From Octopus sinensis (taxonomy: Eukaryota), in the NCBI RefSeq assembly GCF_006345805.1, contig NW_021835519.1, positions 1 through 39,919 on the forward strand: 39,919 nucleotides of DNA, in the 5' to 3' direction. Both the position numbers and the translations under genes were made by a program. Shown here one piece after another: positions 36,656 to 36,920 of the stretch. The stretch's first letter is position 1. Each line of letters opens with the position of its first letter. Below the pieces are notes generated by a model. It did not search any database. It was not told where the DNA came from and was given only the letters and a program-made list of their open reading frames with translations.

Positions 36656-36738
36656 ACTGACCATAAAAGCAAGATGCCTGATGCAACTTCAGAAATTCCC
36701 AATGGACATGCAGCAATGTCCACTCCATCTCATCAGTT
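36656..36738 (+). CDS. GABA-A-type subunit Cys-loop exon (RLTIKARCLMQLQKFPMDMQQCPLHLIS)
   Basis: ttctctttattgcag| acceptor and |gtaagt donor. 83 nt, the conserved size. C-x13-C Cys-loop containing FPMD. Confidence 0.96.
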
Positions 36739-36920
36739 GTAAGTACAACCTTTCACTCCATCTCATCAGTTGTAAGTACAACATTTCACTCCATCTCATC
36801 AGTTGTAAGTACAACATTTCACTCCATCTCATCAGTTGTAAGTACAATATTTCACTCCATCTCATCAGTTGTAAGTACAGCATTTCACTCATCAGTTGTA
36901 AGTACAACCTTTCACTCCAT
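36721..36920 (+). repeat. 33-bp tandem repeat of the exon 3' end plus 5' splice site (six GTAAGT donors)
   Basis: Unit CACTCCATCTCATCAGTT|GTAAGTACAAC(C/A)TTT. GT at 36739, 36772, 36805, 36838, 36871 and 36898. The last unit has a 6-bp deletion. Confidence 0.97.

What the first reader, a model, noticed from the sequence alone, without database searches (positions are those of the whole stretch)
36721..36920. Six identical in-frame splice donors stacked behind the Cys-loop exon
Seen: the last 18 nt of the Cys-loop exon and the first 15 nt of the intron are tandemly repeated. This gives six identical AGTT|GTAAGTAC donors spaced 33, 33, 33, 33 and 27 nt apart. All spacings are multiples of 3, even the copy with a deletion (6 bp), and there are no stops. 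Using donors 2-6 would add CKYNLSLHLIS, then CKYNISLHLIS three times, then CKYSISLIS. Each unit adds a cysteine, and the first four add an N-X-S glycosylation sequon. Established: the insertion point lies between the second Cys-loop cysteine and the loop B aromatic (S-F-G-Y). Inference: a VNTR acting as a splice-length dial that yields a ladder of in-frame, NMD-resistant isoforms or diverts transcripts into non-functional subunits, possibly varying between individuals.
Basis: partly seen in the sequence, partly recalled or inferred. Interest (0 to 1): 0.82.

Follow-up and report, generated by a model that had tools for sequence, protein, structure and literature searches.

The report
Minisatellite repeats a receptor splice donor
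A 33-base tandem repeat in an octopus GABA-receptor-like gene straddles an exon–intron junction and so copies the splice donor six times; this layout is already known from human genes such as F7, the closest relative carries one copy, and nothing here shows it acts as an isoform dial.

Summary
Window 36721-36920 is a 33-nt tandem array of 6.2 copies. Each unit is the last 18 nt of the Cys-loop exon plus the first 15 nt of the intron. This gives six identical GTT/GTAAGTAC donors, all in frame with the acceptor at 37041.

The gene is a GABA-A alpha-like Cys-loop subunit with the conserved 68/221/83-nt exon pattern.

The orthologous Octopus sinensis contig (about 96% identical) has one copy. There, a 9-nt direct repeat CCACTCCAT lies exactly 33 nt apart, a good substrate for slippage. 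The window is 38% tandem repeat.

The in-frame, stop-free property has a chance probability of about 0.07-0.2. Both the 33-nt period and the 6-nt deletion follow local microhomologies.

The layout is a known kind. Human F7, IFI6, CBS, LMNB2 and PDGF carry minisatellites that reiterate a donor, and there the first one to three donors are used.

No transcript data could be reached, so donor usage is unknown. As assembled, the next exon has two 1-bp deletions, so no isoform stays in frame into TM1. These are either assembly errors or recent decay.

Verdict: a real, lineage-specific, probably non-adaptive minisatellite. The "dial" is unsupported.

The parts
2254..2347 (+). Exon A of the GABA-A alpha-like gene. 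It encodes ...KASVKKQSMTQLLDKLLEGYDKRLRPDFG. The donor is GTC/GTAAGTGA. The acceptor is either at 2237 or at 2253; the start is not resolved.
   Evidence: Motif scan and sequence reading. Aligns with the GABRA1 N-terminal helix.
21404..21471 (+). Exon B, 68 nt, encoding QGPLIIKADILIRSMGPVSERDM.
   Evidence: The only one of 27 AG-N68-GT open candidates that fits the family motif. Aligned to GABRA1 and to homologues.
25919..26139 (+). Exon C, 221 nt, encoding IYSMDCYFRQLWTDERL...KDGTILYSQ(R).
36656..36738 (+). Exon D, 83 nt, the Cys-loop exon. It encodes (R)LTIKARCLMQLQKFPMDMQQCPLHLIS and ends in phase 1.
   Evidence: Identical in O. sinensis.
36721..36920 (+). 33-nt minisatellite, 6.2 copies. 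The first unit spans the exon D/intron boundary. Units are 36721-36753, 36754-36786, 36787-36819, 36820-36852, 36853-36885 and 36886-36912 (27 nt, with a 6-nt deletion), followed by a partial copy.
   Evidence: Single copy in O. sinensis L001.
36736..36744 (+). Donor 1 (the authentic position), GTT/GTAAGT, with the G of GT at 36739.
   Evidence: The same junction is used in the O. sinensis protein model P0001.
36769..36777 (+). Donor copy 2. It would add 11 aa, CKYNLSLHLIS.
36802..36810 (+). Donor copy 3 (+22 aa).
36835..36843 (+). Donor copy 4 (+33 aa).
36868..36876 (+). Donor copy 5 (+44 aa).
36895..36903 (+). Donor copy 6 (+53 aa). It lies 144 nt from the acceptor, which reproduces the ancestral intron length and downstream context.
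   Evidence: The O. sinensis intron is 143 nt.
36913..36920 (+). Terminal CACTCCAT. Together with 36721-36728 it forms the pair of 8-nt direct repeats, 33 nt apart in the single-copy state, that bracket the duplicated segment.
36736..36749 (+). 14-nt imperfect palindrome GTTGTA-AG-TACAAC centred on the donor and reiterated in every unit. Neighbouring copies can pair with each other in RNA.
36739..37041 (+). Intron when donor 1 is used, 303 nt. It is open in the exon frame throughout. The polypyrimidine tract and AG acceptor are at 37040-37041.
37042..37180 (+). Exon E, encoding (F)GYTENEVLYKWRFGAERAVDVNAGMTLSQFDLT.... It is 139 nt here against 141 nt in O. sinensis. One base is missing between 37142 and 37143, and another between 37169 and 37170.

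Best explanation
This is a real, lineage-specific minisatellite (VNTR) in an octopus GABA-A alpha-like Cys-loop receptor gene.

Origin. In the single-copy state, two short direct repeats (C)CACTCCAT lie exactly 33 nt apart. One is in the last 18 nt of the Cys-loop exon and the other is 15 nt into the intron. Replication slippage or unequal exchange between them duplicated the 33 nt in between. Further rounds of the same process produced 6.2 copies. Because the duplicated segment contains the exon-intron junction, the donor GTT/GTAAGTAC is reiterated five more times as a by-product.

The in-frame property. It follows from the accidental 33-nt spacing of the microhomologies. The 6-nt deletion follows from a CTC-N3-CTC microrepeat. 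Selection for coding is not needed to explain either.

Splicing. The array belongs to the known class of minisatellites whose first monomer spans an exon-intron boundary (human F7 IVS7, IFI6, CBS, LMNB2, PDGF). The most likely behaviour is that splicing uses mainly the first donor. The downstream copies would be silent or leaky pseudo-donors.

Shown: the anatomy, the gene identity, the single-copy state in O. sinensis, the microhomologies and the repeat-rich context. Inferred: the slippage mechanism, the neutrality and which donor is used.
For: - The array and the six identical donors are confirmed.
- Gene identity: the best solved relative is human GABRA1 at E 1e-71 with an almost gapless alignment. 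Pfam Neur_chan_LBD matches at 1e-49. Exons are 68, 221 and 83 nt.
- O. sinensis contig L001 aligns to window 36382-39912 at 92-97% identity. It has one unit, flanked by CCACTCCAT at L001 336-344 and 369-377.
- The second complex minisatellite in the shared 3.5 kb (222-mer, 3.6 copies, 38724-39515) is also not tandem in L001.
- 38% of the window is tandem repeat, and 18% lies in arrays with period of 10 or more and at least 3 copies.
- The edge units U1 and U6 share AACCTTT. The internal units share AACATTT or derivatives of it. This pattern fits repeated internal exchange in a real evolving array.
- The chance of an in-frame, open unit is about 0.07-0.2.
- Natural precedents show upstream-donor usage (PMC1557585).
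- The family tolerates no length change at the insertion point.
Against: - No RNA or read data could be reached, so donor usage and intraspecific polymorphism are untested.
- The donors pair with U1 over 7 contiguous positions. In engineered substrates, identical strong donors are spliced almost wholly at the intron-proximal copy. That bias starts to rise at about 30 nt separation and is complete at 45 nt or more (PMC3413131). Donor 6 rather than donor 1 could therefore dominate.
- The single copy in O. sinensis could be a contraction or an assembly collapse rather than the ancestral state. No outgroup was available.
- All substitutions between units fall in three adjacent positions (unit positions 28-30). 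This is unexplained.
Confidence: 0.68

Rival explanations
1. Loss-of-function or hypomorphic allele, or a decaying gene. The reiterated strong donors divert splicing to downstream copies, possibly mostly donor 6 (+53 aa). This inserts 9-53 residues into the beta-strand that follows the Cys-loop and gives non-functional subunits. The two 1-bp deletions in exon E are real, and the gene is being lost in this lineage.
For: - Exon E lacks two bases relative to O. sinensis. When it is joined to the O. sinensis TM1 exon, it reads out of frame to a stop.
- Identical strong donors favour the intron-proximal site in engineered substrates (PMC3413131).
- Donor 6 has the ancestral intron length (144 against 143 nt) and the ancestral downstream context.
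- Homologues show no length variation at the insertion point.
- The Pfam ligand-binding-domain match is cut at the insert.
Against: - Exons D and E show 0 substitutions in 222 nt, against 3.7% mismatches in the flanking non-coding DNA. Purifying selection has therefore acted for nearly all of the divergence time.
- Two frameshifts with no substitution fits technical indel errors better. Single-base deletions in the window run at 13 per 2809 nt in non-coding DNA, which predicts about one in these exons.
- Exons A-D are intact.
- All five natural boundary-spanning minisatellites cited use upstream donors.
Confidence: 0.2
2. The array is an evolved, possibly polymorphic splice-length dial. Several donors are used in a regulated way and give a ladder of in-frame, NMD-resistant receptor isoforms with graded or dominant-negative function.
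For: - All six junctions are in frame and free of stops.
- All donors are identical and strong.
- A ladder of this type is known: IFI6 and CBS each use the first donor plus two pseudo-sites (PMC1557585).
- Copy number differs between two close octopus genomes.
Against: - The array is absent from O. sinensis.
- The in-frame property is not improbable and is explained by microhomology spacing.
- The insertion site is invariant in length across the family.
- No array-bearing protein or ORF is on record anywhere.
- As assembled, the downstream exon is frameshifted.
Confidence: 0.05
3. Assembly artefact. The animal has one or fewer units, and the array was inflated by long-read consensus errors.
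For: - The window shows an excess of 1-bp deletions relative to L001 (13 against 7), including two inside a conserved exon. This suggests an error-prone long-read consensus.
- The only independent assembly of the locus has one unit.
Against: - The units differ by three point variants and a 6-nt deletion, in an ordered pattern with edges alike and internal units alike. Stutter artefacts do not usually produce this.
- A 200-nt array is easily spanned by single long reads.
- Other arrays in the same window differ from L001 in the same direction.
Confidence: 0.07

Closest known systems
Human F7 intron 7 (IVS7) 37-bp VNTR (Borensztajn et al. 2006, PMC1557585)
   Same: It is a minisatellite whose first monomer spans the exon-intron boundary. 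The authentic donor is therefore followed by several pseudo-donors of identical sequence. Copy number is variable (5-9 repeats). Some downstream sites would also keep the frame.
   Different: - The F7 unit is 37 nt (4 exonic plus 33 intronic), so most sites are out of frame.
- The F7 donor is weak (UGG/gugggu), whereas here the donor pairs with U1 at +1 to +7.
- F7 usage is measured: only the most upstream site is used. Here usage is unknown.
- The host here is an octopus neurotransmitter-receptor gene with a short (143 nt) ancestral intron.
Human IFI6 (6-16) intron 2 and CBS intron 13 minisatellites (as summarised in PMC1557585)
   Same: The donor is reiterated by a boundary-spanning minisatellite. 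The authentic donor plus the next two copies are used, which gives a short isoform ladder.
   Different: Those arrays have 15-26 copies. Only the first three donors are used. No dial function has been shown for them. Here there are six copies and no transcript data.
Human LMNB2 (100-bp unit) and PDGF intron 4 (81-bp unit) minisatellites (PMC1557585)
   Same: Boundary-spanning minisatellites with reiterated donors.
   Different: The units are longer, and only the authentic donor is used.
Engineered duplicated 5' splice sites (Hodson et al. 2012, PMC3413131, and earlier work cited there)
   Same: Identical strong donors compete for one acceptor, and U1 can occupy more than one site.
   Different: These are artificial two-site substrates. 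The outcome is intron-proximal use, the opposite of the natural minisatellite cases. The 33-nt spacing here falls at the threshold (about 30-45 nt) where that bias sets in.
Short-range tandem donors (GYNGYN type; PMC2423196)
   Same: Alternative donors in tandem give in-frame length variants.
   Different: Those sites are about 3-12 nt apart and are not generated by a minisatellite. A 33-nt spacing and six copies do not fit.
GABA-A receptor alpha / insect GRD-like ('GABA receptor alpha-like') subunits
   Same: The host gene has the ligand-binding domain, a Cys-loop with 13 residues between the cysteines, FPMD, CPL and the conserved 68/221/83-nt exons. The phase-1 intron after the Cys-loop exon is conserved.
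   Different: No family member examined has any insertion between CPL and S[YF].

Membership tests
Minisatellite whose first monomer spans an exon-intron boundary (F7 IVS7 type) | Head-to-tail array of units of about 10-100 nt | tested here: met
   Period 33, 6.2 copies, score 330. Copies are in register.
Minisatellite whose first monomer spans an exon-intron boundary (F7 IVS7 type) | The first unit contains the authentic exon-intron junction, so the donor is reiterated with identical sequence | tested here: met
   Unit 1 is 18 exonic plus 15 intronic nt. There are six identical GTT/GTAAGTAC sites. The junction position is confirmed by the O. sinensis model P0001 and by the GABRA1 alignment.
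Minisatellite whose first monomer spans an exon-intron boundary (F7 IVS7 type) | Copy number varies (VNTR) | tested here: inconclusive
   One copy in O. sinensis L001 against six here. This is variation between two close genomes. Variation between individuals of one species could not be tested.
Minisatellite whose first monomer spans an exon-intron boundary (F7 IVS7 type) | Downstream copies are pseudo-sites: only the first, or the first few, are used | not testable with these tools
   No RNA-seq or cDNA was reachable. Protein and ORF look-ups found no array-bearing product.
Regulated in-frame isoform ladder ('splice-length dial') | Transcripts with junctions from several of the donors | not testable with these tools
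   Same as the row above.
Regulated in-frame isoform ladder ('splice-length dial') | The array is conserved in related species, or its frame is preserved beyond chance | tested here: not met
   Single copy in O. sinensis. The chance of in-frame plus open is about 0.07-0.2, and it is explained by microhomology spacing.
Regulated in-frame isoform ladder ('splice-length dial') | The products remain in frame through the rest of the protein | tested here: inconclusive
   They are in frame across the D-E junction. Exon E as assembled is 2 nt short and reads out of frame into the O. sinensis TM1 exon. This may be an assembly error.
Cys-loop ligand-gated ion channel, GABA-A alpha-like subunit | Neur_chan_LBD domain with a Cys-x13-Cys loop | tested here: met
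   Pfam PF02931 at 1.1e-49. The loop is CLMQLQKFPMDMQQC. The best solved match is GABRA1 at 1e-71.
Cys-loop ligand-gated ion channel, GABA-A alpha-like subunit | Four transmembrane helices (Neur_chan_memb) | not testable with these tools
   The TM exons lie beyond the 3' end of the window. TM1 is seen only in O. sinensis, at L001 9714-9911.
Cys-loop ligand-gated ion channel, GABA-A alpha-like subunit | Conserved exon sizes and phases of the GABA-A/glycine receptor gene family (68, 221 and 83 nt; from my own knowledge of vertebrate genes) | tested here: met
   Exons B, C and D are 68, 221 and 83 nt. The same intron position is read through in unrelated homologues P0003 and P0098.
Unprocessed pseudogene | Frameshifts or stops in conserved exons, together with relaxed constraint | tested here: inconclusive
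   There are two 1-bp deletions in exon E. Against this, exons D and E show 0 substitutions in 222 nt against 3.7% in flanking DNA, and exons A-D are intact.
Short-range tandem donors (GYNGYN) | Alternative donors a few nucleotides apart | tested here: not met
   The spacing is 33 or 27 nt.

The most novel reading that the evidence does not exclude
The array is a polymorphic VNTR in a living octopus population. Several of its strong, identical donors are really used in neurons. Copy number would then set the fraction of transcripts that encode GABA-A-like subunits with 11-residue stepwise insertions after the Cys-loop. These products are in frame and so escape NMD, and would act as graded poison or regulatory subunits. 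This would be a heritable, length-encoded control of inhibitory receptor dosage.
Probability: 0.04. Interest if true: 0.65.

Novelty: new member of a known kind. Interest (0 to 1): 0.28.

Why it matters
The reiteration of a splice donor by a boundary-spanning minisatellite has been described in a handful of human genes. It was used there as a natural model for how the spliceosome chooses among identical 5' splice sites.

This locus would add an invertebrate example with unusual properties:
- the donors are strong;
- the spacing is 33 nt, at the threshold where engineered substrates switch to intron-proximal use;
- the ancestral intron is short;
- every product is in frame, so NMD would not hide minor isoforms.

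It is therefore a clean natural test between the 'upstream scanning' rule and the 'intron-proximal' rule in a cephalopod.

For receptor biology it matters only if downstream donors are used. The most likely consequence would then be a weakened or lost subunit, not new function.

For genome annotation, the locus warns that gene predictors may pick any of six equivalent donors. It also warns that exon 37042-37180 carries probable indel errors.

Tried and rejected
1. I searched the 5.8-billion-protein collection with the longest hypothetical isoform, to catch any transcript- or contig-derived product that carries the repeat. The only hit was the canonical 132-aa O. sinensis fragment.
2. An exact look-up of the 167-aa ORF that runs through the array and intron found nothing on record.
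3. An exhaustive HMMER search of 1.84 billion representatives with that ORF hit only unrelated translated minisatellites and homologues with intron read-through. No orthologous array was found.
4. A scan of the metagenome contigs for the 24-nt junction sequence gave 0 hits.
5. Two further homologue searches aimed at full-length cephalopod orthologues returned only short fragments from other phyla. No outgroup octopus sequence was obtained.
6. Rfam on the whole window found nothing.
7. Folding the pre-mRNA gave z = -1.53, not significant. It did reveal the self-complementary 14-mer around each donor.
8. I considered rescuing the exon E frameshift with the second GT, 11 nt downstream, which would restore the phase. 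I rejected this because the shifted frame meets TAG at 37182-37184.
9. I considered the N-X-S sequons and cysteines as evidence of design. I rejected this because they are copies of one founder sequence and were picked out post hoc.
10. I did not run structure prediction of the extended isoforms. A model of a lineage-specific insert with no alignment depth would not be decisive.

Full report
**Observation**

Tandem Repeats Finder gives one array at 36721-36920: period 33, 6.2 copies, 89% matches, score 330. The gapless repeat finder puts the copies in register.

Each unit consists of the last 18 nt of an exon and the first 15 nt of the following intron. The string AGTT|GTAAGTAC occurs six times, with the G of GT at 36739, 36772, 36805, 36838, 36871 and 36898. 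A 17-mer around the donor occurs six times in the window, all inside the array, against 0.02 expected from shuffles.

Splicing from any of the six positions to the exon that begins at 37042 keeps the frame and meets no stop. The added peptides are CKYNLSLHLIS, CKYNISLHLIS three times, and CKYSISLIS.

**The host gene**

Five exons of one gene lie on the + strand:
- Exon A ends at 2347 and encodes ...LLEGYDKRLRPDFG.
- Exon B is 21404-21471 (68 nt).
- Exon C is 25919-26139 (221 nt).
- Exon D is 36656-36738 (83 nt) and carries the Cys-loop CLMQLQKFPMDMQQC.
- Exon E is 37042-37180.

The joined product matches Pfam Neur_chan_LBD at 1e-49. It aligns almost without gaps to human GABA-A alpha-1 at E 1e-71. 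The exon sizes 68/221/83 are those I know from vertebrate GABA-A and glycine receptor genes (own knowledge).

The closest named proteins are 'GABA receptor alpha-like [Octopus sinensis]' (P0001) and molluscan and insect alpha-like subunits. The insertion point lies between CPLHLIS and FGYT, which align to GABRA1 CPLKFGS|YAYT.

In 13 homologues there is no length variation between CPL and S[YF]. With the full insert, the Pfam domain match stops at the insert.

**Comparison with a relative**

P0001 is encoded on a 10.6-kb O. sinensis contig (L001, VCDQ01012524.1). This contig aligns to window 36382-39912 at 92-97% identity.

L001 has a single unit: CCACTCCATCTCATCAGTT|GTAAGTACAACATTCCACTCCATTCAATA. 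A 9-nt direct repeat CCACTCCAT lies at L001 336-344 and again at 369-377, exactly 33 nt apart. One copy is in the exon and one is in the intron. In the window the same CACTCCAT opens the array (36721-36728) and closes it (36913-36920).

This is the classical substrate for slippage or unequal exchange, and it fixes the period at 33 nt. The 6-nt deletion in unit 6 (CACTC[CATCTC]ATC) lies between CTC...CTC microrepeats spaced 6 nt apart. Both multiples of three therefore have a mechanical explanation.

Numerically, a period divisible by 3, a deletion divisible by 3 and an open unit together have a probability of about 0.07, or about 0.2 without the deletion term. Eighteen of the 33 nt are exon and are open by definition. 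The sequons and cysteines are copies of one founder sequence.

**Context**

- 38% of the window is tandem repeat, and 18% is in arrays with period of 10 or more and at least 3 copies.
- The only other complex minisatellite in the 3.5 kb shared with L001 (222-mer, 3.6 copies, 38724-39515) is also not tandem in O. sinensis.
- Inside the 33-mer array, the two edge units carry AACCTTT and the internal units carry AACATTT or derivatives of it (AATATTT, AGCATTT). This ordered pattern fits an array that has gone through several rounds of exchange. It argues against a consensus stutter.
- With four mutational events in about 200 nt, the array is not brand new. Its internal divergence is of the order of the lineage-specific divergence from O. 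sinensis. This is an inference, because minisatellites mutate faster than ordinary DNA.

**What is known**

The architecture has been described before. Borensztajn et al. (PMC1557585) studied the 37-bp VNTR of human F7 intron 7. Its first monomer spans the exon 7/intron 7 boundary, so that 5-9 identical donors compete for one acceptor, yet only the most upstream is used.

The same paper lists other cases:
- IFI6 (6-16) has 25 pseudo-sites, and the authentic donor plus two of them are used.
- CBS intron 13 uses the authentic donor plus two.
- LMNB2 and PDGF use the authentic donor only.

On the other side, Hodson et al. (PMC3413131) show that two identical strong donors are both occupied by U1 and are spliced almost wholly at the intron-proximal site. 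That bias rises from about 30 nt separation and is complete at 45 nt or more.

The octopus donors pair with U1 at +1 to +7. That is seven contiguous pairs, as strong as any other donor of this gene. They are 33 nt apart. Donor 1 keeps the ancestral exon context. Donor 6 keeps the ancestral intron length (144 against 143 nt) and the ancestral downstream context. Which donor is used is therefore an open empirical question.

My estimate:
- about 0.5 that the first donor dominates, because the natural precedents point that way and the array has persisted in a conserved gene;
- about 0.25 that there is a mixed ladder;
- about 0.25 that usage is mainly downstream.

**A complication in the next exon**

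Exons D and E are identical to O. sinensis at all 222 aligned positions. The flanking non-coding DNA differs at 3.7%, so constraint on these exons has been strong.

Yet exon E in the window lacks two single bases (ACGGAC to ACGAC at 37142/37143, and CCGTCTTC to CCGCTTC at 37169/37170). It is 139 nt long instead of 141 nt. When it is joined to the O. sinensis TM1 exon, which lies beyond the window's end, it reads out of frame to a stop.

Single-base deletions in the window relative to L001 occur at 13 per 2809 nt in non-coding DNA, which predicts about one in these exons. Indels at the background rate with no substitutions at all fit residual long-read consensus errors better than recent gene decay.

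This would also fit the window coming from the nanopore-based O. vulgaris reference. That reference was polished with Hypo, and the species split from O. sinensis about 2.5 Mya (PMC10700109). The species of the window is inferred, not proven. I weigh error against real at roughly 60:40. Either way, the claim 'in-frame, NMD-resistant' holds only across the D-E junction in the sequence as given.

**Searches for transcripts or independent copies**

All came back empty:
- the longest hypothetical isoform;
- the 167-aa ORF through the array and intron;
- an exhaustive search of representative proteins;
- a scan of metagenome contigs for the junction sequence.

These collections hold very little octopus material, so the negative result is weak.

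**Verdict**

The 'dial' is not supported, for these reasons:
- the array is not conserved;
- its frame-preserving geometry is explained by microhomology;
- the insertion site is invariant in length across the family;
- the known natural counterparts are silent or leak only into the next two sites.

The best explanation is a non-adaptive, lineage-specific minisatellite of the F7 IVS7 kind (confidence about 0.68). The main rival is that it is part of a hypomorphic or decaying allele (about 0.2). An assembly artefact (about 0.07) and an evolved dial (about 0.05) trail behind.

It is a new member of a known kind. Its main value is as a natural test of 5' splice-site choice in a cephalopod.

Noticed in passing
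window 37142-37170 (exon E, 37042-37180): Exon E has two single-base deletions relative to O. sinensis, with no substitutions in 222 nt of exons D and E. The exon is 139 nt instead of 141 nt and reads out of frame into the TM1 exon. This is either residual indel error of the assembly or very recent pseudogenisation.
   Followed up: partly
window 36736-36749 and each further unit: The donor sits at the centre of a 14-nt imperfect palindrome, GTTGTA-AG-TACAAC, which is also present in single-copy O. sinensis. In the predicted RNA fold, neighbouring units pair through it (donors 1:2, 3:4 and 5:6). The overall z-score of -1.53 is not significant.
   Followed up: partly
window 36748-36750 and equivalent positions (unit positions 28-30): All point differences between the six units fall in three adjacent positions, at the 3' edge of the palindrome (A/G, C/T, C/A). 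The rest of every unit, including the donor, is identical. This is unexplained.
   Followed up: no
window 36739-37041: The whole 303-nt intron is open in the exon frame (ORF 36681-37184, 167 aa), so intron retention would also be in frame. The O. sinensis intron is 143 nt, which is not a multiple of 3.
   Followed up: partly
window 25796-25896: A 16-nt minisatellite (CAATCACGTTTGTCAT, 6.4 copies, 95% matches) ends 22 nt upstream of the acceptor of exon C (25918). Its CAATCAC core resembles the acceptor sequence CAATCAG but lacks the AG.
   Followed up: no
window 26207-26943: A (CTT)n tract of about 246 copies starts 68 nt after the donor of exon C. Similar long trinucleotide tracts (TAT)n lie at 27321-28592 and 29183-29838.
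   Followed up: no
window 12430-16680: A 4.2-kb satellite of 46-nt units (93 copies, 92% matches) lies inside the 19-kb intron between exons A and B. It is followed by related 109- and 129-nt periodicities up to 17066.
   Followed up: no
window 38724-39515: A 222-nt tandem array (3.6 copies, 83% matches) is present here but not tandem in the orthologous O. sinensis contig. This is a second copy-number difference within the shared 3.5 kb.
   Followed up: partly
window 21879-22213; also 2423-3304 and 24945-25359: SINE-like element copies of about 184 nt (GAGTGGCTGTGTGGTAAGTAGCTTGCTTACC...) are scattered in both orientations. A related copy lies in L001 at 8327-8706.
   Followed up: no
P0003 and P0098 (homologues from other organisms): Gene calls on genomic contigs of distant homologues read through an intron at exactly the same position and phase (GS|CKY..., GS|CKF...). 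The intron after the Cys-loop exon, and a T|GTAAG-type donor, are therefore widely conserved.
   Followed up: partly
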